From Guillardia theta CCMP2712 (Eukaryota > Protista > Cryptophyta), in NCBI RefSeq assembly GCF_000315625.1, contig NW_005434610.1, positions 170,265 to 234,264 on the forward strand: DNA of 64,000 bases. The letters run 5' to 3'. The notes under the pieces were generated by a model that saw only the letters and a list, made by a program, of their open reading frames with translations, was not told the DNA's origin and did no database searches. This document shows positions 1 through 55,773 of this stretch, piece by piece. The translations under genes and the position numbers were made by a program. Within the stretch, counting starts at the first letter, position 1. Every line of letters starts with the position of its first letter.

Positions 1-368
1 GCTCCCTGTTGAAGTTTATCCCTGTCGTTAGGTACTAGTCTGAGTATATGAACGCTACATTTAGCCTCTGATCGGATTCAGGCATGCTGCGGCAGTAGTA
101 ACGCTGTGCCGCCAGTAAGCCGCACTGCAGCCCTCTGCGGCACTCTGTTACAACTGAGGGGAGAAGCTGGACAAGATCCACCGTGACTCGAAGTTCAATA
201 GGGCTCCGGCTCGGCAGCCTGGCACTGACGGGGTCCGAGTCTCAATCAGGACTCCGGAGAGCCCCGGGCCGGGCCGCCGGGCGACCCCGGCCGGCCCGGG
301 GAGTTCTAGTGTAGGACAAAAGATGCGATAAGGGTGTCCAGCAGGAGGTAAGAAAGTGGGACAGGAGG

Positions 369-3899
<3,531 letters not shown>

Positions 3900-4450
3900 T
3901 TGCATAATTATAAGCATTATACATAATTATATGATAAAAAATAAAAATAAAAAATGACCAGTCGGAGTAAAACAGAGTTGACTAATTTCGGAACGTCATG
4001 TCGAGAAGGCGAAGGGGAAGGAGGAGGGGGGGGAGGAGGAGAAGGGAGGTTGAGGGTAGTGAAGGGAGTTAAGAGTAGGATAAGTAAGAGAAAATGGTCA
4101 GAGATAGAGGAGCAAGTGGAAGCATGGGAGAAAGTGGGGGAGGACGAAGTAGTTGAACGCAAGTTAGAGGAAGAAGTTGAAGAGGAAGTATGGGGAAAGG
4201 AGGAAGGTCCTGCGCTTCTTATGGTGAACCAGACCAAAGTGCATGCTGAAGTGTCTTACATTTGCGTGTGGTCTTGCTTTACTTGTGGAGAAACTAGAGT
4301 TCTTTGCGGAGATCGTTTGACAGCTTAGCACTCAGGGGGTCTTACTGGAAATCTTGTCGTTTTGCTTTGCATGACTTGTACTCAAGCTCGGGATATTAGC
4401 TGACATATGTCACAGTGCATGATCAAGATGAGCAGGACCTGAAGAAGAGG

Positions 4451-6210
4451 ATGGCGTTTGCTGCCGAACCTCCCCGCAAGAGGGACATGAAATATCACGA
4501 GGACGACAATAAAGAAGTTCAAGAGACTGCTCTGAAGAGAGAGCTTGATGTGTTCGATCTCACAATCATCGGTGTCGGAGGGATCGTGGGAGCTGGGATC
4601 TTCGTCCTCTCCGGGCAAGCAGCAGCCATGTACGCGGGCCCTGCGGTGGTTCTTTCCTTTGCGATCGCAGGAGGGTGTTGTACAATCTACGCTCTGTGCT
4701 TTGCCGAGCTCTCCACCATGGTCACAGACACTGGGAGTGCGTACACGTACGCTCGTCTCGCCTTCGGGAATTTTGTCGGGTGGATCGTGGGATGGTCGCT
4801 GGTGGCAGAGTACTTGTTCTGTGTCTCTGCTGTCTCGGTGGGATGGAGCGGTTATGCGAGCGAGATCTTTCAGCAGCTGGGAGTTCCTCTGAGCTCCCGA
4901 TGGAGTACTCCACCCTTAGCCTTCGACGAGAACCACAACATCTACTTCACTGGTGCTGTGCTCAACGGCCCTGCTGTCTTCCTCGTCGTCTTCGCCTCCA
5001 TCATCGTTGGGCTCGGCGTCAGGATGTCAGCCATCGTTGCCAAGGTCAGCGTGCTGATCAAGCTGGGGGTGATCGCGACGTTCCTTGCCTGCGGCATGTT
5101 CTTCATCCACGGAGAGAACTACAGCCCCTTCGTTCCCGAGAACAAGGAGGGCGACTTCAAGGACTTCGGGCACTTCGGGTGGTCAGGAGTCTTGAGAGGG
5201 TCGAGCATTGTATTCTTTTCCTACGTCGGTTTCGACGCCATTACTACAGCAGCATCAGAAGCCAAAGATCCGAGCAACGACCTTCCCAACAGCATCTTCT
5301 TGAGCCTGGGGATCTCGACTGCGCTCTACATGCTGGTCCGCTTGCCCTATTCCTCATGCTTCCTGCCCTCTGCCTCCTCCTGCTTCTTTTCTCCTGCCTG
5401 CTTCTTGCCTTGAGCGAGCTATTGACTCCTCTCTACAGGTCGCCTTCGTCATGTGTGGCCTCGTCTCCTACACAGCCCTGGGAGTTGCCGACCCCATTCT
5501 CGTCGCCGTCAAGGCTGCAGGCCCGGGGCTGTCCTGGCTTGTCCCCCTCATCGCCGTCGCCGTTGTAGTCGGGCTGCCTGGGGTTGTGGTGGTGTCGCTC
5601 TATGCTGTGACCCGCGTGCTCTACGTCATGGCGCTTGACGGAATGCTCCCTCGGCAGTTCCAGGAGGTCAACGAGACCTTCAGCTCCCCGATGTTCAGCA
5701 CGGGCTTTGCTGGAGTGCTTGCTGCCATCATCGCTGCCTTGTTCCCCATCTCGGCCATCGCTGAGTTTGTTTCCATTGGCACCCTGCTGGCCTTTGCTGT
5801 CATCTGCTATGCTGTCGTCTCCTTGAGGGAGAAACGCCCCGACATGCCGCGCAACTATCGCGTAATCCTCCTCCCCTCTCCTTCCCCCTTCTTCGTGCGT
5901 CCGCCTGACCTTTGTCGTCAGGTACCTTTCTCACCCTACCTGCCTTATGCAGGCATGGTCATCGCTGTTTCTCAGGTTTGACCTCCTGCCACCCTCCATC
6001 GCTCCTTCTGCACGTTCCTCTTGCACGTTTGCTCCTCTTCTCTCTCATTTTCCCTTGAACTTCCTGTCGTGACTTGCGCAAAAGATCCTCTTCCTCCCCT
6101 GGATGGCGTGGGTGCGGATGTTGTTCTGGATCTTGATGGGCCTCGTCATCTGGTACTTCTATGGAAACCGTGTGGAGGAGAAGCCATACTCCTACGATCG
6201 GGTAGAGTAA
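4451..6210 (+). CDS. APC-superfamily (cationic amino acid transporter-like) permease, multi-exon
   Basis: LKRELDVFDLTIIGVGGIVGAGIFVLSG, AGPAVVLSF, GSAYTYA, FFSYVGFDAITTAASEAKDP, RVLYVMALDGMLP, SIGTLLAF; last exon ends ...YSYDRVE* at 6210; start codon uncertain. Confidence 0.92.
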
Positions 6211-6372
6211 GATATCAGAGCGAGTGCAAACAAAATCTTGGGGCTGAAACAAGGGAGAGGTGAGTAGGAAGGCGAGAGGCAAAGGGATACAGAGCATGAG
6301 CAGCGAAGCGTGAGCAGCGCATGCCTTGATACCTAGTCTCTTCCTCCGCTTGCTCCATCCCCTTCAGCTCCC

Positions 6373-9300
6373 TTACCAATGCTGGACCCCTCGAATGAAG
6401 AGCTGCTTCAGCTTGCTCATCAGCTTCCAGTCCTCACTAGTCATCTCCTCCGCGAAGTGATCTTTCATTGCCTGTATCCCGTCCCGGGTGATCTTGCTGT
6501 AAAGTTTCACCTTGTGATCGAACTGCCGCCCATAGAGGATGTGTGACTGCTGGTCGTTGCTGGGCTCGATCTTCACTGCGACGCTCATCCCGACCTTCGC
6601 CACCTTCACCTCCTTGTGGTTGTTCTGGATGGACGTCACTTTGCCGATCTCTAGAAAGTTGAGCTCAGGAATGCAGAGAGGCGTTCCAACCTGCCAGATG
6701 ACAGTTGAGTCTGAGCCGCGAGGAGGGGGGGGGGGGGGGGAAGGGGGGAAGGGTCAGGTGAGGGCGAGGAAGAAGAGGGAGAGAGCTAAATGTGAGCTTG
6801 ATCAGTGGGAGGCATGAGGGAGAGGCAAGAATCAGTGAGGCAGGAGAAGAGGTAGCAGGGCAGGGGGAGAAGGAGGTACAAGAGGAGGGAACATGAGACG
6901 GGGAGCAGGGGAGCTAGAATGGAGTACCTTGAGCGAACCCTCCTTCACCTCACAACCGAGAATGATCGGATTTCTCTTGTTGAACACGTTCTTTGGGATG
7001 ATACTGAGGATCACAGGGAAGACGGCGACGCCATTGGAGTACAGCTGGACAGGTTGTCATGCACGGAGCGGGTGCGGGGTGACTTGACCTGCTCCCTCTT
7101 TGCCGCCTTCTTCTCCTCCATGAAACTCTTGAACTGATCGAAGAGATGGTAGATGATGTTCGCTGTAAAGATCTTGATTCCAGCCTTCTTTGCAAGCGCC
7201 TCTGCCTCAGGCACAATCTGCTCGCTGTCAGCTCCGTTGCTTCCGCTTCCTCCTGCTCACCTTCACATCGAAGGCCAAGATCATGGCCAGGTCTGGCGCT
7301 CGTTCGAGCATTGCACTGCATGAGATTGAGAGGAAGCAAACGCATAGATGTCGATCACAAGTGACAAGAACAAGAGGACGCGACAAGACATAGCAGTCGC
7401 ATCAAACACCCACCACGATGTTCAACTCTCCCACATCATCTCAACAAGGGACAAGATCTTTCCAACCTGGCTCGGATGACATCTTTCTTGTGCACGGGCC
7501 CGATGTTGATGGAGGCAACAGGAATGCTCGAGTTGTGCAGGAAGTCCAAAAGTGCCTCCAGAGCTCCCAAGGTCGATGCCTTGGAAAATGTCAGTCTGAT
7601 AACTCCTTCCTCCTCCTCCTCCTCCCTCCATCTGCTTGCCAACCACCTCCCTTCACCTTACTCTTTACCCCCCCCCACCCCCCCCCATTCTTCTCCCAAC
7701 TCCTTTCTCTTCACTCCCTCCTCTTCACTCTCCCCTCCTCTGCCCTTCCTCGCATGTTACCTGGACATGAACACCTTTCCCGGACTTGTCCACGTCTTTC
7801 TTCAGCTCCTCAAGGTCTTCCATCACCGAGCTGGGAAATGTCAATCGCCGCCAACAGTACCCTCCTCCCACCTCTTGAGCTCCTCTATATCATCTTCCTT
7901 CTCCAGTCTGAGCAGCGACGTTCCTGAGAGCGAATCAAGACTAAGACGTCTCCTCGCCCTTGTCACCTGCTACTGCTCCTTCCAGACCGCTCGCTGCAAT
8001 CTTCACGCCCATGGCGGCCTGCAGACTTGATGTCACGGGCGGGAGAGCGACGGCCATGCTTGCCTCTATGCTCTTGTGGTGGACATACTCGTTCTTCACG
8101 CGCAGTTCTTTCATAGGGTGAGGAGTGAGGAGAGTCCTGATGGTCGTGACGATTGGGCCCTGCATGCCGCAAACCACAATCGTGTCGCCCTCGTGCAGCT
8201 CTCCATGGACTGCCGAAACGACCGGCGTCAGCATCTGACACTCGAGGAGGGGAAGGAACCAAGGATAATATCGAGCGTGGTCCCGAAGCCTTCCGTCACT
8301 TTGACCTTTGGTGAAACTTCAGTGGGGAGGAAGAGGAGGAGAGGAGGAGAAGCAGAAGTGAGAGGAAGCGAAGGGAGTTGCCAGGACGAGCAGCGGAAGG
8401 CGATGAGCAGACCTCAAGAACCGTCGCCTCAAGAGCTTCGCTGAGCATCAATCTGAAGGGAACGTTCAGCGAAGAAGGGACGGTGAGTGGGAATATCGAC
8501 CTGTCGACCAACATCTTCTGGGTCAACTGGATGCCGAGGAGGAGGAGATCAGGGACGCCTTCACCGGTGATCGCCGATGTTGGAACCACCGAGACCACCT
8601 GCGACAAGCAGAAGTGAATATGCACGCGCAACCAAATCAATCTGTTTGTGACTAGGAGAAATTGATGGCAATCGCCAGTTCTTACTTTTCTTGGGTTCTT
8701 GTTCTCGTAGTAGAGATCAGCATTCAATCCCTGGCTAGCTATCTCTCCCTTCATTGGGTGTTACCATCCACTGAGTATCCGTACTTCAATCACCTTAATC
8801 CCTTGCCACCTGCTTTCAAACTCTCTGACTGTATGGCTCTTCTGCTTGGCTAGCGTATCCTGTCGATGAAGCGATATTACAATGAAAGGTTGGCTCCAGC
8901 AGGACAAGCAGCACCTGTATCGGAGAATCTTTGTTCGGCTGCCAATCATAGCATCTGATCTCGAGTTACAACGTCTTTGAGTGTTCAAGAACATGGAATG
9001 ACCGATCGATCTTGTTCAAGGCGACAAGAAAAGGGCACCTCCTCCTCTTCAACAGCTGCAGAAATTCAGCACGGAAATCTCCGACACGCCTTCCCAGTCA
9101 CCTGCAGAGATTCGATCGTCTGGGGCTCCAGCCCGTGCATGATGTCGACAACGAGGACGCAGATGTCGCAGATCGAAGTTCCTCGTGACCGGAGGTTGCT
9201 GAACGATTCGTGTCCGGGGGTATCGATCACCAGCAGCCCGGGAATCTTGTAGTCGACCTTAACAGAATGGGACACCTGATCCGTGAGCTTGCGCAGGTTT

Positions 9301-10084
9301 GTCATGGGGAAGAACGTCGCGCCAATCTGCTGTGTGATCCCTCCCGCCTCTCCCTCTTGCACGTTGGTCTTCCTTACTTTGTCCAACAACTTTGTCTTTC
9401 CGGTGTCCACATGTCCCAGTACACAGAGGATGGGCGACCTCAATCTGGCAAGATTCGTCAGAGAGCTGAGAGAGGCGAACAAGATCATCGAGAACAGTCC
9501 TTTCACCTGTCTTTGCTTCTCGCTTGCTTCGCGTCTTCCTTCCTTTGCAAACGATCCTGCTTCGCTGCTTCGATTCTTGCCAGCAGTGCCTCGTCGACCT
9601 GCGCACTTTCCTCCTCGTCGCTCTCCTCCTCCTCGCCTTCTTGCTTCCTCCTCCGCTTCTCTTCCTCTTGTTTCCTGGCTGCCAGCAATTCCTCTGGTAT
9701 CTTGTACTTGTCGTCTGTATTGAGATACTGGATGTCCTGTGTCAATTCCTCCAGGTCGACCGCCTCTTCCGCCTCCTGCGTGTTCGCTCCTGCCACGTCC
9801 TGATCGTCACTGTCGTCTGATGAAACATAGCTCGATGTCCCCAGCTCCGACGAGCTCTCCCCTTTTGCTGCTCCTCCCCGCAACCGCAGTCGCGCCGAAG
9901 ATGAAAGCTGTGAAAAGTCGTTCAAGAAACGCTGCGAGGTCGACCCTGAGGAGACGATTCGAGGAAGATGGATGCCAACCTTGTGCTGCGAACTCTCAAG
10001 AAGCGTTGTGCATCCAACAAGCAGCAAGATTGCAACGGAAACGTAAAACTTGCTGTGCGCGTCCACGGCGAATTCCCGAAACAT
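6373..10084 (-). CDS. eIF5B: Eukaryotic translation initiation factor 5B with an N-terminal signal-peptide-like presequence, multi-exon
   Basis: [84 protein letters not shown]...SKITR...DWKL (eukaryotic-type C-terminus). Confidence 0.95.
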
Positions 10085-11322
10085 ATTAATCGAACTATGT
10101 GGAGGAAAACTCTGGGAACTCGGAGACCGGCTGAACCATCAGACGCTGCGAGCAAGATCAGGTTGCAAGAATGAACACCATCGATGAAAGAGCTTCAATC
10201 CACTCTCTCTTCAACTTCTATCAAGAATGTGTGGGAGCACCAACTCAAACGGGTTAGAGATAGCGGTCGTGAATCAATGACTTTCGGCTTTCGTCACCCC
10301 AAGACTAAGAGCATTTTGTCTTCCAGAGCATCAAAAAGCCGTCCCTCATGTACTGTCTCCTTTCTACCATATCTTTCATGCATCGAAAGTACATGATCAC
10401 TTGGCCCCCGTATCGCCCTCAGCAATCATTCCATCCCTCTCTGGAGTTCTTCACTTTCATGCTCATCCCCTTTCTCTAGCACTGTTCAAAGGACATCTTT
10501 CATCCTAATCCTTATTCTCCTCCTCCTCCTCCTCCTCCTCCTCCTCTCGTAACGGCGATCGCATTTCATCGATCCTCATAGCGACCGCCCCCGCAAGTAC
10601 CCCCACCCCCTCTGACCAGTTTCAGCCAACAAAATCTTTCCTACCCCACTTTGAGTTAATCCACCTACCACTACCACCAACGACATTACTATTGAGCACC
10701 CGTCCTAGACTACCCATAGATACAATATACCCCACCACTTTGTATCCACCCCAGCTTTCTCCCCACCCCGTCTCCTGTAGGGAATTCTGGTGAAATGCAA
10801 GGGTGCTTCGAGCTATTGCCTGCTACTCCCCCCACCCACCCCCACCCCACCCTCCTGATGAGGTAGGCTAAGCGTTTCACGCCAGGCCCAGAGGTCCAGA
10901 TGTCCAGATCCCGTGGTACTAACTTTACTCAATAAATTTGAAATCATCTGGACCAATGGCATAAAAGAGAATTATATTTCCAAAGGTCGAGATGGTGAAC
11001 CGTTGTGGTCGAGTTTGTCAGCAGGGTGATTGCACCCTCATACCCATGCTTCCCGCCCTTCCCTTCCTGCCTTGCTGTGTACCCCGTGCGGACTCCAGTG
11101 ATGAAGCTCGAGTTTGCCATTAGCTCGAGCTAATGGCAAACTTGAGTACCTTGAGTACCTTGAATCCCTGTCGCATGATGACGAAAGTATTCTGGAGACA
11201 TGGACACGTTGTGAGATGCTTCTGTTGATGTGCAATGTGACGGGCAATGACGAGAAAGCGCCTGAACTGGGGGGAATGGGTGGAGACCCTATTGGACAAG
11301 GAAGTCATTCTTCGCCTTTAAC

Positions 11323-11925
11323 GTGCAGGCCGTGTGTGATGCCAATCGAAAGGGTGCAGCCCTAGCAAGAGATGGCAGAAACATTGGAAATGGAATGTAT
11401 ATAGTTGGAGATGCAGCATACAAAGGAATTCCTGGAATAATCACTCCTTTTGATGGATCAAAGCTCCCAATTTGGCAAGACAGTTATAATTTTCATCAAT
11501 CTCAAATCCGGACTAACATTGAGTGCGCATTCGGAATGTTGAGGAACAGATGGGGAGTGTTCTGGCGTGGATTACGCACAGACTCACTGGAAATTGCAAG
11601 CACTAGTGTGAGTGTATGTTTGCAATTGCACAATTTTATATTAGACATGGATGGAACAGATGCCGATCCTCTTGAGGAAATTATTGTAGAATAGGAGTAC
11701 TGCTCCCCCGTGCCATGCCAGGACAGATTGTCAGAACAGCATCGACCTATCTTGAATGAAAACGGTGGTCCAGCTGATTTTTGGTCGAGTTCTCCCATCA
11801 ACGCCATGGTTACTGACGAGTTTGACAGTGTCAGTATCAGGAACAGTCTAGTTGAAACACTGCAAAACATGCAGATACCAAGACCATCCTGGAATCAAAG
11901 GCCGCCGCCAGATTCTTCGATGTAA
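11323..11925 (+). pseudogene. Truncated Harbinger (HARBI1/DDE_Tnp_4) transposase
   Basis: NVQAVCDA, IVGDAAY, TPF, YNFHQSQIRTNIECAFGMLRNRWG motifs; the GSxHD segment is missing between CDA and GDAAY; in-frame TAG at 11692-11694 with the same frame continuing to 11925. Confidence 0.85.
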
Positions 11926-47771: not shown

Positions 47772-48305
47772 TTCAACATCAAGGATCACAACAACAATAT
47801 CGCTGATGTCCTCGCCATCATCTGCTCCTCCCCTTCCCCTTCTTCACACTCTCCTCAGGCAGGCGTCTCCAACGTCGACTTCATGAAGAATATCAGGAGC
47901 AAGCTTCAAGGGGTGGTACTTCCCTCCTCCCCAGCCCCAGGGTCTACCTGCTCCTCATCCCCATCCTCCTCCTCATCCCCATCCTCCTCCTCGTCCCCAT
48001 CCTCCTCCTCGTCCCCATCCTCCTCCTCGTCCCCATCCTCCTCCTCGTCCCNNNNNNNNNNNNNNNNNNNNNNNNNNNNNNNNNNNNNNNNNNNNNNNNN
48101 NNNNNNNNNNNNNNNNNNNNNNNNNNNNNNNNNNNNNNNNNNNNNNNNNNNCCCTCCATCTGACCATCAGCAGCACCACCAGACCCCCCAGCTCGACGCG
48201 TCATCATCTGAGGGCATCAACGGTCTTATTGTAAAGAAAGCAGCAGCACTTGTATCCAATGACTGCACGAGATCGTTCACGAGGACACGGCGGCAAGGAC
48301 CATAG
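45880..48305 (+). CDS. DHHC palmitoyl acyltransferase 2, multi-exon
   Basis: TM-rich first exons, RPCDKC...RWHHCG, CKRCVPRMDHHCPWLNQC, IGRDNYR, GVSNVDF. Confidence 0.85.
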
Positions 48306-51300
48306 GGCGAGCTTGCACGATATGAACCTGCGGCTCCTTGCTGTCCAGCACCACCACACCCTCCACGTCCTGCTCCGTCCCTCGCTCCTTGGCCAGCAGC
48401 ATCACAGCCTTGGCGATCCTCTTGATGAGCGATGAGCGAAGAGCCTCGTCGGTGTGGAGGGGGATAGATGAGTAGTCGATCACCTCCTCCTTCAGCTCCT
48501 TCCCCTTCCCGTCCGCGGGCACGAGAGCGAAGGAGAAGCTCGCGAGGGAGGAGACGGCGGCCTCTCCCTTGGACTTGTCGTAGGTGAAGCGATACGGAGT
48601 TCCTGCCTGCCCTGCACTTGCCAGCGTCTCTCCCATCCCGACGCACATCTCGATGTAGACCTGGTTGGGATCGCGGGTGATGGGGTTGGAGGAGAAGGCG
48701 ATGAAGGATAGGTCCCCTGCCACCATCTGCTGTACCAGCACTCCCATCACCGCTTCCTCGTGCTTCAGCCCAGCTGACCTCCTGCTGAGCGCTGCTCGCT
48801 TCGTCCACAAGCTCTGCCACACTCTCGAGATGGCAGATGCGAGCGCCTCCTCCTCCTTCACCTCCACGTTCGCGATGGAGTCGTACAGCCCAGCTCCGCT
48901 CACCTTCTGCAGGTCCTCGCAATTCGCGCTTGAACGCACCATTACTCGCGCGTCAGCTGGGAACGATCGCATGATCGCACTCGTCACGTCCTTGGGCACC
49001 TTCCACTCCGACGATGCGAACGATCGCATTCTCGCCGCCAGCTCCTCCGCCAGCTGCCCTGACGTTGCCTGCGCGTCGAACTCCTTGGCCTGCTCCACGT
49101 ATCGCCCCCAGCTGGGCTTGGCAGCTTTCATCATGACTCCGAAGGGCAGGGCACAGCCGGGCGGAGCCTTGAAGTCAGCTCCTCCCTTGGCTGCGATCCT
49201 CGAGATTTCCCCGGCGGCTGCCGACTTGGCTCCACATGTCTCCTCCGACGCCTTCTCGCACGCCAGGACCTCCGAGACCGTCAGGTCCGCGTTCGACTGC
49301 AGGTCAACCACTGCAGCCGCCTCCTCCTCCTGCCCCCTCTCGGGCCTCAACTCCGTGCGCGACACTGTGACTGAGCCTCCGACATTCACGTTGAGCTCCA
49401 CAAATTGACCCCAGCTGGAGCCTTGCTTGCCCTTGAGCTCCTTGAACGCCTCAGGGCCATCGCTGCAAACGAACACAACACCCTGCTGCCTTGCCCGCAC
49501 GCCCAAGTGAGAGAGGAGGGGGAGTTCCTCCGCCAAGACGATGCCCTTCACAAACGGCGGAATATCTTCATCTCCCTGCTCACAGCTCAAGGTCAACAAC
49601 GGAAGAAGAGGAGGAAGGGGGGGAGGAGGGAAGCAGAGCAGGAAGGAGGTTCCCGAAGGGATAAGAGGGACAGCCATGTTGGGAGGGGAAGGAGGAGGAA
49701 AGAGAAGATGGGAGGAAGGAAAGGAGCGTCAAATCGCAGCACCTCTGCATGCTCCAGGAAGGCAATCAGAGGCTCCGTTTCTCCTCCCTTGTGATGATCC
49801 AGCAAATTGGCGAGACTTTGATGCTCCACCAGCCGCCCCGCTGCTTTTCCAGGCTGCAGGGCCGCCCAGGGAGGAGCGTTCATGGCCTTCTTGGCGAACT
49901 TGATGGAGGCTGTAAGGATGCGGGAGAGCTGGAAGACGACGCTTGCTCGGACCTCCGCCTTGCAGGGGGCGAGAGACGTTAGAGGAGAGAGAAGAGAGGG
50001 GCAGGCGCTACCTCGACGAAGACAGCAGCAGCGTGAGGGTCAACCTGAAGCGAATTGCCGAGCGGTCCGACGTGGGCGAGGAAGAGGTCCTGCATGGCGT
50101 CGGAGAACGAGGTGCACAGGCGAACTGCGAGAGGGTGAGGAAATTGTCTTGTTCCGCTCTCCTTATGACTCACTTGAGCGATCTAGCCAGGCCTTGAGCC
50201 GATGGAGGTTGAGGGAGGAGGACGAGAGCATCGCTTCTCCCTGTTGACAACCCAGTGAGCGATAGCTGGAAGCGCAGGATTCATCGCTACCTCCTTCCTC
50301 AACGCTTCTGCTTCTTTCACATCCACGGACTCGGAAAGGTATCCGTTTTCAAGCGCGCCTATCGCCGCCTCCACTGCCATCTTCCAGTCCAAGTTCGCTC
50401 CTTGTCCTTCTAAGATCTGAGCTGCCTCGGCCAGTAGCACAAAGGCAAACTGAGAGCAAGTGAGAATAGCAGTAAAATCGATCTCCGTGAAGAAGCAGTG
50501 ACGGGATCCTCGTCTCAACCGTCTGCCTGTCTTCTTACCTGCTCCAACGAGACGTCGGTCAGTCTTGCTCGCTGCTTCGCCTCGCCATGTGGGACAGTGG
50601 AGATGAAGGAGTCAAAGTTCTTTCTGAGCTTGATCAGCGCCTTCAACTTCGCACGGAAGTCTGAGCTCGTCCTGTTTCCATCGTGGTACAAGCAGAAGGC
50701 AAAGTTCAGACGATGACGCGTCAGTGAGCAACATTCGTACCTCTTCTGCGACAAGAACTCATCTATCAGCTTGATTCCTTCCGCATTTGGTTCTCCCTTG
50801 CCCTTCATCTCCGTGAGGCGATCCTCGAGCCCACCAGCATTGAAGAATTCTCTCAGCTCAACCTGCCTCAATCAATCAACGCGGGCTAGGCCCTTTAAGA
50901 GGTCAAGAGACCATGAAGATGCGCATCTGCTCCATGAAGGCCGCGCTGTAATGTCCTGATTCTGCCTGCTTCATGATCCGTTCGGCAGTCACGAGGTCCT
51001 CCTGCAAGGGGCGTCAATGGCATGGCAATGGCGTCGAAATGGCAACCGGGCCGGCACATCTGTGCAGCTTGTTCTGCAGGTTGTGCTTGATGTCGTCTTT
51101 CATTTCCTTTGGAATGTCAGAGCGATGGGCAATGTCTCGGATCCTTGTCAGGGGGACCTTTCGACACCATCACACAGAGAGCAAGGAAAAGAAGATTTAA
51201 ATTGCACTTGAGCTGTGTAAGCCGACGAATATGACGGGAGGAGAGGATGAATTTTGCGGATCACTATCATGACAGTCAGGGAGCAGACGAAAAACGAGGG

Positions 51301-53107
51301 ATAGAAGTTACCGTAAGCATTTTCAGGAGTTTTTTTAATCTTGTCAAGCGCCTCGTCGATCGCACTGCAGATAGACGAATGTTACAATCATGCGGATAAA
51401 AACAGCAAGGCGGAGTGGGACAGATGAGAAAAGATTCGATGCGGAGTGCACAAGATAAGGAAGACTTCATGCCTGGCCATCATTGAATGGTGGTTCGGCC
51501 GATAATGCCGCCCATCCTCTACGCATGTGACCTAGAAGGAGGGAGGCGAGGCGAGGAGGAGGAACCAGGGAAGAAGGGGGGAAAAAAATGTCACAAACCT
51601 TGCTAACATCGCATGCCGATTTGGGCGGTTGTGCCCTCCCACATCGTAACAAGGAACCTAATCTTTCTACTCAATCGCTCATCACATTCTTGTGGATCGG
51701 AGGAGAAATGAACAATCCTCTTCTGGAAATGACAACTGAAGCTCTGTTGGCTCCAGGTTGAAATCACCTGCCCCGTGCTGAGGAAGTGCAGGTATATGGC
51801 GATCATCGCAAGGTGGGAAGTTTCCGGTTCTTGCTGATTGAAACCAGATGCCGTCGCAAGATCTAAAGGACTATTCAGTACCACCAGGAGTGCATGGATC
51901 TGAATCACTCTTATCGTAGAAAAGTGTCTTCACAAATTCCAGCTTCTGCCGCCATGATCCCTACAAACATCAATGGCATCAGATATTGTTCGATGGAGGC
52001 AATAAGATTCTACATTCTCTTGGTTTGCCTTCACGATCGCAGCACCAAACTTGTCAAGCTCTTTGGAAGTTATCTGCCAGTCGACATGCCCTGCAAAACT
52101 TTGACCTTCCCTTCTTGACAAAACTCAGAACCGACCCGAAGGCTTATGGTCGTCCCTCTTGCTCGTTCCGTGGCTTCTCTCGATCTGAAATGGAAAAGTC
52201 AAGACGGAACAGGCGCCATATGTGACGAATGAACAACAGCAAAGCTGCAAACAAAAGTACTGATGATGCCACGAGTCGTGATCACCTTGCTCGACGAATG
52301 CGAGTGGCTACCGGATCCTCCAGCGTCAATGCCGACGGGAGAATCGTGAAATTCTCCCTTTGAGAGCACGTCCGATGTGACCTTGGGGATGGTGACCTTG
52401 ATAGGCGAGCAAAGAGCACAGGAGTAGCCACCGTCAGCTTGCGATTCGACGAGCTTCCTTGTCCCTCCCATCGCAGGACCTTCCCTGAGTCACCAATGAT
52501 GCAGTACCTGAGAAAGAAAGCAAGGTCAAACCACACAAAGGTGAGGTCAATCCATAGGTTTTGAACGTCAAGACGTGGCGGGTGATCATGAACGGCAACG
52601 ACCAGGCTCGAAGAAACACTCACTTGTACTCGATGTTCTCGCCTTCATTCAACGAAACGCTTGCCTTCCACTTCGGAAAGTCTGAGGAGGCGATGACGGC
52701 AGGCGATATTCCGATACTCTCCTCGCTCACCTTTTCCATCCATCTTGATAGGGTTCTTCCATCGCCCCAAAGAATCACAGGATCCCACAAGACCTTCCAA
52801 TCTTAGTCTCAGCTCACGACTATGAACCAAGTTCTTCACCAACACACTCCCCGAACTTCGTGCTGTCGCAAGTCGTGACAAACTTCACGTTTGAGCCGCC
52901 GCCTCGCAGGTTTCTGTGACGGGGGAAACATTGTTGAGTCAGAGGATAACGACTTGGAACATCGGCTCACAGTCTGCTGCTGGAAGAAACTGCACTCCCC
53001 GGCTGAAATCGCCATCGGAGGCTGTCGCTGCTTATCTCACTGCATGAGCACTTTGCGAGCAGGAATGAAACCAAGAGTGCCAGGGCTCCGGCGATGAAAC
53101 TTCGCAT
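48277..53107 (-). CDS. PWD: Phosphoglucan, water dikinase (GWD3/PWD type): signal peptide, CBM20, phosphohistidine and PPDK-like nucleotide-binding domains
   Basis: CBM20 VKF...TKFGECVGLVGSCDSLGRW; VPLTRIRDIAHRSDIP, KHNLQNKLHRCAGP; LPLLSHLGVRARQ phospho-His; VRSSANCEDL...SGAGLYDS, QDVEG, VQARP. Confidence 0.92.
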
Positions 53108-53991
53108 TTTCGGTCTGAATGAGCACAGTCAAATAGCCGGTTTACCAAGTTGAATGACAATATCTCTTCATTTATCACACACTCATCTTCCATCACATTC
53201 CATAGTCTATCACAAGTGTTGTCTTGTCTCCCCTCCTTCTCCTGGACATCGTCATCAACTTGTGCATCCTGCCTCTCGTACATGTGCTCCTTCTCCTGAT
53301 CCTTCCCCTGATGCTCCTCCTCGTCATGCTCCTGCTCCTTTGTCTGTTCCTCCTGCATTCTTGCGTCCTTCCAGCATCACCCCACCCCATCAGATGATGA
53401 TCCTGTGATGACACTACCCTCATATCTAACTAAAACGTACCCGTGATTACATGTAAAAAATACTACCCCACCCCACAGATCCTGACAAAGATCCGATTAG
53501 GGAACGCGATGGAGGAAAAGCAGTGAGGGAGAGAAAAAACAGCAAGGAATGTTGCTGGTAATCTTCATGACAATGAATAGAACTGAGCATTTTTGCGAAC
53601 AAGCTTGACTTCAGTGCTGAATGTGTCAGGATTAGGAAGCAGGAGCTCATTCAGGAAAGTATGAGATGCAAGCTCCCTTCGTACTCCTCAAGGTGAACAA
53701 GGCATGTGCTGTGATGAAAGACAAGTGCATTACAGGGGATTCGAACAGAGGTGATAGAGAAATGATTGGTGAAAGGGGAATCATGAAAGTGAAGGTCAAG
53801 GTCGATCACTCAAAAGAAGTAACATTCTCGATCCTACATCATCCGGGCAAGAAGAGAAGGAATCGCTACGGATGATCTCCAATGGGTCGAAAGAGAAGAG
53901 GTGTACGCCAAACACTGAGTCATGTGGTACATACAATCATCTAAATTAAATCGTCTATAGCGCATAAAGAATAACTCCCGGGGTTGCAAAA

Positions 53992-55773
53992 TCATTGTTC
54001 AACCAATTTCCCAAACTCCCTTTCCATACCTTCGAAAGAAGGTCTTGCCATCGCATTTCTGTCCCAGCAGCTGGAAATGATTTCATTCACATCCTCACCA
54101 CCGTTGTGAGGATTTCCCAACGTGCTCCCCTCCTGCAACACTGCTTCTCTCACCTCGTGATCTGATTTCATCTGGTAAGGCATGTCTCCGTCCGACCACA
54201 TCTCCCACAGCACCACACCGAAGGACCAGACGTCGCCGGGCACGGAGAGCAGACCAGTTCGTAACACTTCAGGAGCCATCCATCTTATGGGTGTCGCTAT
54301 CTGCACCGTATCCCCTGTGGCTCCTCCGAGGCTCTCCGCGCCCCTCAGGATCTCGAAGAGCATATAGTCTCCAACCTTCACCTTCGTCTTCGTGTAGTCC
54401 GTCGGGTCGAAGGACTCGACGTGGATGTGCTTGGCCGCAAGGTTGCCATGAATCACTCCACAACAGTGCAAGTGATGCATACCAGAGCAGATCTGCCTTG
54501 CCATCTGCATCATGTTCTTCGTGTGCGTCTCATCCTCCTCCTTGTCTGCCAGCTGAAGCAGAGAGTCTAGAGTTCCCATCGAAAGATTTTCCACCACCAA
54601 GAGAAGCTCCCTCTCCAACACTGACGAAACTCCGATGATGTCAAGAACATGATCGTGCATTTCAAGATTATTGAGGCGATTCAGATCTGAGTTGACTCGG
54701 GCAAGTCGCCAGTCTTGCATGTCACACAAGGAAAGCAAGGTGACTCGCTTGGACACACCCTCTCCTGAGACCAGTTTCGCGAATCTGAATGTCTTGTAGT
54801 TTGTAAATCTGAAGGGTTCGGTCACATCCGAAAAATCCTGAAATTCAATCAGAGGAAACGAATGCATCTGAAGCCCGCTTCCACGGGGTAAAGGTGCTGT
54901 TGGCATCTGAAACTCTTGAGGAGAAATTTGTCTGTTCACTAGGGACGTCTGATTCCATGGACGGAGTGGCCCGGGTGCATAGGCCAGCTCTGAGGATGTT
55001 TGTGCAACCATCGTTTGCGTTTGAGCTCGAGCAGGGAGTTTCCTCAGCATCAGCAGCAGGATGAATAGAATCACCAGCGCTGACGTCGCCCCCACAATGA
55101 CGACGGTCAAGGAACCTAGCGGCACCCACAGGCACGAATCCGATTCAGGCTCAGCATACAGCATGCCGGGGAAGCAGCGCCTGCACGACACCGAGGAGGT
55201 TCCATTGGGAGGAGCGAAGTAGCCCGAGGGACAGGAGAAGCAAGAAGTCGCAGCCTCCGTCCTGGAGTACGTCCCGCTAGGGCAATTCTGACAGACCCCT
55301 TGACTCGAGTTGAGGAATGTGCCAGGAAGGCAGGCTAGGCAAGATCCACTGGCATTGATCATGTATCCTTCCCTGCACGTCGTGCAAGTTGTTGCCGCAA
55401 CACCCGAGTACTTTCCTTCTGGGCAGCTCCGACAAAACGTTGCTGATGTAGAGGTCTGGAACGTTTGTGCCGAACAGTTCTTGCAAGTTCTGTCTGGTGT
55501 CAAATATTGACCTGGCAGGCATGAAGGCGCAAAGAAGAATTGCCGGGATTGCACTGTCTTTATCCCTCCCATTAGGTCGCCATAGCTTTCTGAGCACGAC
55601 GTATCAAGTGTGCTCGCCTTCTGATCGATACAAGACAACATCTTTTGATGTTCAAGAGCATGCATTGGATCTGAACCGACCACTAATCGGATATACAGTA
55701 ACAGCGTAATAGCTGTCTGCATAGATCCAGGCATCCGAGGCTTGAAAGGTGATAGACCAGTTACAGACGGCAT
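53992..55773 (-). CDS. Intronless receptor-like tyrosine-kinase-type pseudokinase with Cys-rich (GCC2/GCC3, ephrin-receptor-like) ectodomain
   Basis: Hydrophobic N-terminus, CxxCPxGxY repeats, TM LTVVIVGATSALVILFILLLML, IHGNLAAKHI, KVGDYM, PIRWMAPE, DVWSFGVVLWEM, CW...RPSF. Confidence 0.88.
   Translation of the reverse strand: MPSVTGLSPFKPRMPGSMQTAITLLLYIRLVVGSDPMHALEHQKMLSCIDQKASTLDTSCSESYGDLMGGIKTVQSRQFFFAPSCLPGQYLTPDRTCKNCSAQTFQTSTSATFCRSCPEGKYSGVAATTCTTCREGYMINASGSCLACLPGTFLNSSQGVCQNCPSGTYSRTEAATSCFSCPSGYFAPPNGTSSVSCRRCFPGMLYAEPESDSCLWVPLGSLTVVIVGATSALVILFILLLMLRKLPARAQTQTMVAQTSSELAYAPGPLRPWNQTSLVNRQISPQEFQMPTAPLPRGSGLQMHSFPLIEFQDFSDVTEPFRFTNYKTFRFAKLVSGEGVSKRVTLLSLCDMQDWRLARVNSDLNRLNNLEMHDHVLDIIGVSSVLERELLLVVENLSMGTLDSLLQLADKEEDETHTKNMMQMARQICSGMHHLHCCGVIHGNLAAKHIHVESFDPTDYTKTKVKVGDYMLFEILRGAESLGGATGDTVQIATPIRWMAPEVLRTGLLSVPGDVWSFGVVLWEMWSDGDMPYQMKSDHEVREAVLQEGSTLGNPHNGGEDVNEIISSCWDRNAMARPSFEGMEREFGKLVEQ

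What the first reader, a model, noticed from the sequence alone, without database searches (positions are those of the whole stretch)
52880..53107. Hidden RLNLRGG in PWD assembled across a 19-nt micro-exon, directly before CBM20
Exon 53107-53041 (MRSFIAGALALLVSFLLAKCSC), intron 53040-52990 (GTGAG..CAG), exon 52989-52971, intron 52970-52914 (GTGAG..CAG), then exon gives ISSSSRLNLRGGGSNVKFVTTCDSTKFGE. The ORF track does not show this. The presequence after the signal peptide is only ~12 aa and is almost nothing but the motif, ending at the domain boundary. No aromatic residue follows the signal peptide, consistent with PPC rather than stroma.
Basis: partly seen in the sequence, partly recalled or inferred. 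Interest (0 to 1): 0.8.

Follow-up and report, generated by a model that had tools for sequence, protein, structure and literature searches.

The report
Ubiquitin-tail motif ends cryptophyte PWD leader

Summary
The window is Guillardia theta CCMP2712. The gene on the minus strand (53107 to 48277) is a phosphoglucan, water dikinase (PWD). I model it as 22 exons and 1084 aa.

The motif RLNLRGGG is real and is assembled across intron 52970-52914. Spliced transcript contigs from three runs in three studies cover 52971-53116 without a break. So there is no 19-nt micro-exon. The leader is a signal peptide plus about 30 aa, not about 12, and it contains W and F.

All four cryptophyte lineages with a complete N-terminus have signal peptide + divergent linker + [R/G]LxLRGGG. 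These are G. theta, Chroomonas CCMP1168 (an exact LRLRGG) and two environmental lineages. The codons differ between lineages, and the CBM20 fold starts at the next residue. Red-algal PWDs have no leader.

A second, unrelated gene in this window, an eIF5B-type factor, has a signal peptide followed by [12 protein letters not shown].

The best reading is a periplastid-compartment leader whose conserved end is a processing site, possibly cut by a deubiquitinase-like protease. Cleavage and localisation are inferred, not shown.

I found no paper describing the motif.

The parts
48277..53107 (-). Complete coding region of the G. theta phosphoglucan, water dikinase (PWD): 22 exons, 21 introns, 3255 nt, 1084 aa
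   Evidence: 15 junctions are listed. The remaining introns were placed by open reading frame and by the Hanusia phi protein P0001 (874 of its 967 residues are identical to my model). The mRNA length of 3341 nt equals X1 contig positions 13-3353. Pfam finds PPDK_N and GWD1_pHisD.
52971..53107 (-). Coding part of exon 1. It encodes the signal peptide (MRSFIAGALALLVSFLLAKCSC), the transit-peptide-like linker (SEISSDSLRWRFQPGSAVSSSS), then R45 and the first two bases of L46
   Evidence: Gap-free transcript pieces cover 52971-53116 in X1, X2 and X6. The hydrophobic core IAGALALLVSFLL has mean Kyte-Doolittle hydropathy 2.67.
52990..53040 (-). It is kept in the mRNA, is in frame, and encodes 17 aa of the linker
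52914..52970 (-). The real first coding intron (57 nt, GTGAG..CAG). It splits the Leu codon of R-L|N-L
   Evidence: Transcript pieces end at 52971. Only this splice keeps the frame open into CBM20.
52895..52975 (-). The RLNLRGGG motif, encoded by 52975-52971 (AGA CT) and 52913-52895 (A AAC CTG CGA GGC GGC GGC). The span given includes the intron
   Evidence: The motif is kept in the orthologues with different codons.
52432..52913 (-). Exons 2-5 (52913-52848, 52801-52731, 52681-52624, 52507-52432), encoding the CBM20 starch-binding domain that starts right after GGG
   Evidence: Model. Pfam CBM_20 is found in the orthologues and, as a partial match, in P0168.
48277..49575 (-). Last exon: phosphohistidine domain (PLLSHLGVRARQ) and nucleotide-binding domain
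   Evidence: Pfam GWD1_pHisD at 45.9 bits and PPDK_N at 120.4 bits.
9503..10084 (-). Exon 1 of an unrelated eIF5B-type gene. It has a hydrophobic signal-peptide-like segment, a linker and [12 protein letters not shown], with the motif RLRLRGG at 9892-9872. This is a second leader of the same kind in the window
   Evidence: GTP_EFTU, D2 and D4 are found in the downstream exons. The motif is kept in the 94.6%-identical relative L014.

Best explanation
Shown. This is the nuclear gene for the Guillardia theta phosphoglucan, water dikinase. Its true N-terminus is a 52-aa leader missing from the public model. The leader has an ER-type signal peptide of about 22 aa, a serine-rich, net-positive, lysine-free linker of about 22 aa, and an eight-residue element, RLNLRGGG, that resembles the ubiquitin C-terminus LRLRGG. 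The element is formed across one real intron. It sits immediately before the first strand of CBM20. It is the only part of the leader conserved among cryptophyte PWDs.

Inferred. The leader is a bipartite signal that takes the enzyme through the ER and the ERAD-derived SELMA translocon into the periplastid compartment (PPC), where cryptophyte starch is made. The RLxLRGG(G) element is the leader's processing site. It would be cut at or after Gly-Gly by a periplastid protease that recognises a ubiquitin-tail-like peptide, most plausibly a deubiquitinase-type cysteine protease that also matures ubiquitin there. The cut would release a mature enzyme beginning 0-2 residues before CBM20.

My step probabilities are:
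- conserved functional leader element, about 0.85;
- PPC targeting, about 0.8;
- the element is a cleavage site, about 0.55;
- the protease is DUB-like, about 0.3.
For: Gene and leader.

Conservation: G. theta SSSSRLNLRGGGSNVKF; Chroomonas CCMP1168 APAAGLRLRGGGRDIEF (P0172); environmental lineage P0170 LRPSRLCLRGGGNEVEI; environmental lineage P0277/P0169/L007/L010 VPGRLSLRGGGAFEI or ...TLEM. Each has a signal peptide, and the rest of the leader cannot be aligned. Synonymous codon differences show selection on the peptide.

Specificity: among 275 dikinase homologues, LRGGG ahead of CBM20 occurs only in the cryptophyte ones. Red-algal PWDs start with Met plus 1-8 aa and then CBM20.

Boundary: Pfam CBM_20 starts 1-3 aa after GGG. 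In the AlphaFold model of P0170, residues 1-50 have pLDDT 50-60 with no secondary structure, and the strand begins at residue 51 with pLDDT above 92.

Not specific to PWD: eIF5B in the same window has a signal-peptide-like segment followed by [12 protein letters not shown], with different codons. Two RL.LRGG are seen against 0.06 expected.

Context: starch metabolism is periplastidial in G. theta (bioRxiv 10.64898/2026.09.25.754361). An aromatic +1 residue marks stromal import (PMC3017844). SELMA depends on ubiquitin, yet its deubiquitinase ptDUP is absent from Cryptophyta and an alternative enzyme is postulated (PMC12412216).
Against: There is no experimental N-terminus, no localisation and no protease, so cleavage is pure inference from position and resemblance.

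Classical UCH and USP deubiquitinases bind the ubiquitin fold. The leader has none; it is predicted to be disordered.

P0170 may have Tyr at +1 of its linker (..VGNA|YVID), which by the aromatic rule would point to the stroma.

No signal-peptide predictor was available. The signal peptide rests on hydropathy and small residues at -3 and -1.

Generality beyond two genes in this window rests on about 20 unchecked first-reader notes.

Key older papers (Gould 2006, Curtis 2012, Deschamps 2006) could not be read, so prior description cannot be fully excluded.
Confidence: 0.5

Rival explanations
1. The motif is a sorting or recognition element, not a cleavage site. It would mark preproteins for SELMA or Cdc48 handling, or for retention in the periplastid compartment, and the leader would be removed elsewhere or not at all.
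For: Conservation and position fit a recognition element equally well. The linkers are almost lysine-free, so a ubiquitin-tail mimic might substitute for, or direct, ubiquitin-dependent steps. ptDUP is missing in cryptophytes.
Against: A sorting signal has no obvious reason to abut the first residue of the folded domain in every orthologue and in eIF5B. Known ubiquitin receptors read the fold, not the tail.
Confidence: 0.2
2. It is a cleavage site, but for a conventional presequence peptidase (for example a stromal-processing-peptidase-like metalloprotease or another periplastid endopeptidase). On this view the likeness to the ubiquitin tail is coincidental.
For: It has the same positional evidence as the best explanation. 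The leader lacks a ubiquitin fold, which most deubiquitinases need.
Against: The match to LRLRGG is exact in Chroomonas PWD and in G. theta eIF5B. Such a strict consensus is unusual for transit-peptide peptidases, which have loose sites (general knowledge).
Confidence: 0.2
3. One reading: the 51 nt are spliced out, giving a 19-nt micro-exon and a ~12-aa presequence as the main product.
For: The segment has good GTGAG..CAG ends and the typical 51-nt length of G. theta introns. Removing it keeps the frame.
Against: Transcript contigs of three runs in three studies keep it. The X1 mRNA length fits only retention. The orthologues have ~25-32 aa between signal peptide and GGG, not ~12.
Confidence: 0.05
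4. The motif is a chance or merely flexible Gly linker, or an N-terminal cap belonging to the mature CBM20, and has no role in targeting.
For: Gly-rich linkers are common. The sample is four lineages.
Against: L, L, R, G, G and G are invariant while the flanks diverge and the codons differ. The motif is absent from all non-cryptophyte PWDs. It is present in the unrelated eIF5B leader. Chance expectation is 0.06 per window.
Confidence: 0.05

Closest known systems
Bipartite targeting signals (signal peptide + transit-peptide-like region) of red-lineage complex plastids; periplastid-type leaders lack an aromatic +1 residue (Gould et al. 2006, from memory; PMC3017844; ASAFind 2.0, PMC12136025)
   Same: An N-terminal hydrophobic signal peptide is followed by a hydroxylated, net-positive linker. 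The residue after the likely signal-peptide cut is non-aromatic. The cargo is a starch enzyme whose pathway is periplastidial in cryptophytes.
   Different: Known descriptions stress the start of the transit-peptide-like region (the +1 residue and charge). They give no consensus for its end. Here the conserved part is the end, a strict RLxLRGG(G). The linkers are almost lysine-free, whereas N-terminal lysines are reported to matter in diatoms (Lau et al. 2015, from memory).
C-terminal tail of ubiquitin, ISG15 and NEDD8 (LRLRGG / LALRGG), cut by deubiquitinases; LXGG sites of papain-like viral proteases
   Same: The hexapeptide is the same or nearly so: LRLRGG in Chroomonas PWD and G. theta eIF5B, LNLRGG in G. 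theta PWD. It is followed by the start of another polypeptide, as in ubiquitin-fusion precursors.
   Different: There is no ubiquitin fold upstream. The element sits in a disordered leader behind a signal peptide. Cleavage has not been shown.
Double-glycine leader peptides of bacteriocins and quorum peptides (cut after GG by C39 peptidase domains)
   Same: A short N-terminal leader ends in Gly-Gly, with hydrophobic residues at -4 and -6, and would be removed by a papain-like cysteine protease at the point of translocation.
   Different: That system is bacterial, has no signal peptide, and pairs the leader with an ABC exporter. There is no evidence of homology. It is a functional analogy only.
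Plant and red-algal phosphoglucan, water dikinase (PWD/GWD3)
   Same: The architecture CBM20 - phosphohistidine domain - PPDK_N is the same. The protein is about 40% identical to the Porphyridium and Rhodosorus PWDs.
   Different: Red-algal PWDs are leaderless. Plant PWD has a simple chloroplast transit peptide. The cryptophyte enzyme has the signal peptide + linker + RLxLRGGG leader.

Membership tests
Phosphoglucan, water dikinase (PWD/GWD3) | N-terminal CBM20 starch-binding domain (not the CBM45 pair of GWD1) | tested here: met
   Pfam CBM_20 scores 48-55 bits in the orthologues P0170, P0172 and P0169, and 25.6 bits (partial match) in the truncated public G. theta model P0168. The G. theta N-terminus aligns through the whole domain.
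Phosphoglucan, water dikinase (PWD/GWD3) | Phosphohistidine domain with the catalytic His, plus a PPDK-type nucleotide-binding domain | tested here: met
   GWD1_pHisD scores 45.9 bits and PPDK_N 120.4 bits on the last exon. The LSHLGVRAR motif is present.
Phosphoglucan, water dikinase (PWD/GWD3) | C3 phosphorylation of pre-phosphorylated glucan | not testable with these tools
   This needs an enzyme assay.
Periplastid-type bipartite targeting signal | Cleavable ER signal peptide at the N-terminus | tested here: inconclusive
   The hydrophobic core IAGALALLVSFLL has mean hydropathy 2.67, is preceded by MRS, and is followed by small residues (A-K-C-S-C). No signal-peptide predictor was available.
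Periplastid-type bipartite targeting signal | Transit-peptide-like region: hydroxylated, net positive, non-aromatic at +1 | tested here: met
   The linker SEISSDSLRWRFQPGSAVSSSSRLNLR has 4 R against 2 D/E and 10 S. The +1 residue is S if the cut follows CSC. Caveat: P0170 may have Y at +1.
Periplastid-type bipartite targeting signal | Localisation in the periplastid compartment | not testable with these tools
   It is inferred from the periplastidial location of starch metabolism in G. theta.
Ubiquitin-like C-terminal tail | L-R-L-R-G-G (or L-x-L-R-G-G) hexapeptide | tested here: met
   LNLRGG in G. theta PWD, LRLRGG in Chroomonas PWD and G. theta eIF5B, LSLRGG and LCLRGG in the environmental lineages.
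Ubiquitin-like C-terminal tail | Beta-grasp ubiquitin fold preceding the tail | tested here: not met
   Residues 1-50 of P0170 have pLDDT 50-60 and no secondary structure. Pfam finds no ubiquitin family. This is therefore a tail mimic, not a ubiquitin-like protein.
Ubiquitin-like C-terminal tail | Cleavage after Gly-Gly by a deubiquitinase | not testable with these tools
   No proteomic or enzymatic data are available.
Double-glycine leader peptides (C39 peptidase substrates) | Leader ending in GG together with a dedicated C39-ABC exporter | not tested
   Only the GG end and the hydrophobic residues at -4 and -6 are shared. No exporter context exists in a eukaryotic nuclear gene. It was considered as an analogy only.

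The most novel reading that the evidence does not exclude
Cryptophyte proteins imported into the periplastid compartment carry a ubiquitin-C-terminus mimic (RLxLRGG) as the last element of their leader. A periplastid deubiquitinase-type protease cuts there. Presequence removal would then be done by the same ubiquitin machinery that drives SELMA import. That would be a new class of organellar presequence processing. It would also explain why cryptophytes lack ptDUP and why their leaders are nearly lysine-free.
Probability: 0.3. Interest if true: 0.85.

Novelty: new variant of a known kind. Interest (0 to 1): 0.66.

Why it matters
How proteins that stay in the periplastid compartment lose their leaders is unknown, and so is which enzyme replaces the missing deubiquitinase ptDUP in cryptophytes (PMC12412216).

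A strictly conserved ubiquitin-tail-like element at the leader/mature junction gives a sequence handle that can be tested directly:
- it predicts mature N-termini;
- it gives a search pattern for the periplastid proteome of cryptophytes;
- it points to a protease class.

The work also corrects the public gene model of a key starch enzyme. GUITHDRAFT_164559 lacks its leader and half of CBM20. Taken at face value, that model would look cytosolic.

Tried and rejected

2. A brute-force intron search timed out, and a memoised search gave too many solutions. The middle of the gene was resolved with the Hanusia phi protein instead. This revealed a GC-AG intron.

3. Several orthologue sources gave no N-terminus:
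- Hanusia phi P0001 is N-terminally truncated and has no contig on record.
- The Baffinella frigidus locus L001 starts at about residue 592 and contains repeated exon-like segments, so its N-terminus is out of reach.
- The environmental loci L002-L004 start at about residue 280.
- P0171 and P0173 are truncated.

4. The 12 extra bases at the 5' end of the X1 transcript contig are not in the window.

5. The G-domain of eIF5B is too conserved to pick out cryptophyte orthologues. Only a 94.6%-identical relative was recovered, so cross-lineage conservation of the eIF5B leader is untested.

6. The RGG hit at 2289 (-) and other LRGG-like hits lie in non-genic or low-complexity frames.

7. Deschamps 2006 and Haferkamp 2006 (starch-granule proteins of G. 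theta) and Curtis 2012 are not held.

8. The third word-search of proteins was left unused, because no query that could be given by reference would have tested how general the motif is.

Full report
**Identity of the locus.** The window is Guillardia theta CCMP2712. The public protein GUITHDRAFT_164559 (EKX40827.1, P0168) maps here. The last exon on the minus strand (49575-48277) carries Pfam GWD1_pHisD and PPDK_N. Homologues are named phosphoglucan, water dikinase, for example in Porphyridium.

The coordinates and arithmetic are right. I laid one raw RNA run and three runs kept as contigs on 48200-53400. The contigs of X1, X2 and X6 skip many short GT..AG introns, so they are spliced transcripts. 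All three cover 52971-53116 as one uninterrupted 146-nt piece.

I completed the gene model from four sources: the 15 listed junctions, open-frame constraints, alignment to the Hanusia phi protein P0001, and one GC-AG intron. The model has 22 exons, 21 introns, a 3255-nt CDS and 1084 aa. The summed introns give an mRNA distance of 3341 nt between 53116 and 48200. That is exactly the span of X1 record 1 (positions 13-3353), and it is possible only if the 51 nt are retained.

The 51 nt are in frame and stop-free. The motif survives, but the leader is longer: MRSFIAGALALLVSFLLAKCSC / SEISSDSLRWRFQPGSAVSSSS / RLNLRGGG / SNVKFVTTC... The motif is still assembled across a splice, at intron 52970-52914, between the second and third base of Leu46.

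A rare isoform lacking the 51 nt cannot be excluded.

**The public model.** P0168 starts at internal Met88 (MDGKDFPKW). It lacks the leader and the first half of CBM20; its Pfam CBM_20 match covers only profile positions 46-88. It also differs from the transcripts and from Hanusia at two internal junctions.

A profile-free search with the last exon and a word search with the Hanusia protein gave every cryptophyte PWD available. Four lineages have complete N-termini:
- G. theta;
- Chroomonas sp. CCMP1168 (P0172 and P0276);
- an environmental lineage P0170 (transcript contig L006);
- an environmental lineage P0169 and P0277 (transcript contig L005), with genomic relatives L007 and L010.

All four have a hydrophobic N-terminal segment, a linker of about 25-32 aa that cannot be aligned between lineages, and then RLNLRGGG, GLRLRGGG, RLCLRGGG or RLSLRGGG. 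One to three residues later comes the conserved E/K-[FI]-x-[IVT]-x-C strand of CBM20.

The codons for the invariant L, L, R, G, G and G differ between lineages, so the peptide is what is selected. Among 275 dikinase homologues collected, an LRGGG ahead of CBM20 is found only in these cryptophyte sequences. Red-algal and other PWDs begin Met plus 1-8 residues and then the same strand.

Pfam places the start of CBM_20 1-3 residues after GGG. In an AlphaFold2 model of P0170 residues 1-150, residues 1-50 are unstructured (pLDDT 50-60). The first strand begins at residue 51, directly after R47-G48-G49-G50, with pLDDT above 92.

**A second instance in the same window.** Scanning all six frames for RGG found [12 protein letters not shown] at 9892-9872 on the minus strand. 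It lies in a 193-aa first exon: [29 protein letters not shown]...[20 protein letters not shown].... The downstream exons carry GTP_EFTU, D2 and D4, the eIF5B/IF2 set.

eIF5B is a cytosolic-type translation factor. Behind a signal peptide it is the kind of protein expected to serve the ribosomes of the periplastid compartment. The motif again lies where the leader meets the charged N-terminal region of the mature factor. Its codons differ from those of the PWD motif.

A relative 94.6% identical in DNA (L014) keeps [10 protein letters not shown] while its neighbours change, but that is little divergence. RL.LRGG is expected 0.06 times per shuffled window, and 0 of 300 shuffles reach the two seen here. 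The receptor-type kinase next door (53992-55773), an ordinary secretory or membrane protein, has no such motif.

**Interpretation.** Starch metabolism of G. theta is periplastidial (citing Deschamps 2006 and Haferkamp 2006, which I could not read). Stromal import in red complex plastids needs an aromatic residue at +1 of the transit peptide. Here +1 is Ser if the signal peptide is cut after CSC. That cut site is inferred, because no predictor was available.

The leader is therefore best read as a periplastid-type bipartite signal. Its one conserved element matches the ubiquitin tail LRLRGG, exactly so in Chroomonas PWD and G. theta eIF5B. It lies exactly at the leader/mature junction, which is where a processing site would be.

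Import across the second membrane uses the ubiquitin-dependent SELMA machinery. Its deubiquitinase ptDUP is reported absent from Cryptophyta, with an alternative enzyme postulated. Ubiquitin made in that compartment must in any case be matured by a protease that cuts after LRLRGG; this rests on general knowledge.

I therefore favour cleavage at the motif by a deubiquitinase-like protease. Three points stand against it. The leader has no ubiquitin fold, and most deubiquitinases need one. Nothing here shows cleavage. A recognition role, or a conventional peptidase, fits the same data.

The four PWD leaders contain 0-1 lysine, and the one in G. theta lies within the signal peptide. That is notable given the reported role of N-terminal lysines in diatom SELMA import (from memory, not checked here).

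**Novelty.** Full-text searches found no paper that combines LRGG with Guillardia, cryptophyte, periplastid compartment, or plastid plus signal peptide. ASAFind 2.0 and Felsner 2010 describe no such element. Subscription papers and the 2012 genome paper were not searchable, so this is absence in the held library only.

I treated them as leads only.

**Verdict.** I class it as a new variant of a known kind, a bipartite leader with a strictly conserved ubiquitin-tail-like end. It gives a testable route to the unknown periplastid processing protease.

Noticed in passing
window 9503-10084 (-), motif at 9892-9872: An eIF5B-type gene whose first exon encodes a signal-peptide-like segment, a linker and [12 protein letters not shown], containing the exact ubiquitin tail LRLRGG. 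The downstream exons carry GTP_EFTU, D2 and D4. It is a second, unrelated leader of the same kind as the PWD leader.
   Followed up: partly
window 48277-53107 (-): The public model GUITHDRAFT_164559 (EKX40827.1, 1011 aa) starts at internal Met88. It lacks the leader and half of CBM20, and it differs from the transcripts and from Hanusia at two internal junctions (an extra TIPKV, and a wrong exon after FYDK).
   Followed up: yes
window 51365-51472 (-): A GC-AG intron (GCATGA...CTGCAG, 108 nt) is needed to reproduce the Hanusia sequence HHSMMASAIDEALDK and the transcript length. All other introns in the gene are GT-AG.
   Followed up: partly
window 51532-51767 (-): A 236-nt intron in a gene whose other introns are 45-167 nt, most of them 45-57 nt.
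   Followed up: no
P0170, P0172, P0277 and the G. theta PWD leader: The linkers between signal peptide and motif contain 0-1 lysine, although lysine ubiquitination of the presequence is thought to drive SELMA import in diatoms.
   Followed up: no
window 53115-53117 (-) and the 5' end of the X1 transcript contig: The transcript contig carries 12 bases upstream of 53116 that are not in the window. The genome reads ...ttcag|accgaaaATG there. This suggests a 5'-UTR intron, a spliced leader or an assembly artefact.
   Followed up: partly
L001 (Baffinella frigidus MU646556.1) 3400-11600: The PWD locus shows several tandem, slightly different copies of exon-like segments (GVRARQQGVVFACS four times, RRAAGMKH...VLVQ four times). 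This may be exon duplication or an assembly problem.
   Followed up: no
window 53992-55773 (-): An intron-free 593-aa ORF encodes a receptor-like protein with Ephrin_rec_like/TNFR-type cysteine repeats, a transmembrane segment and a Tyr/Ser-Thr kinase domain. It lies directly upstream of the PWD gene.
   Followed up: no
window 48052-48151: A 100-N assembly gap lies about 125 nt downstream of the PWD stop codon, within or just beyond the 3' UTR.
   Followed up: no
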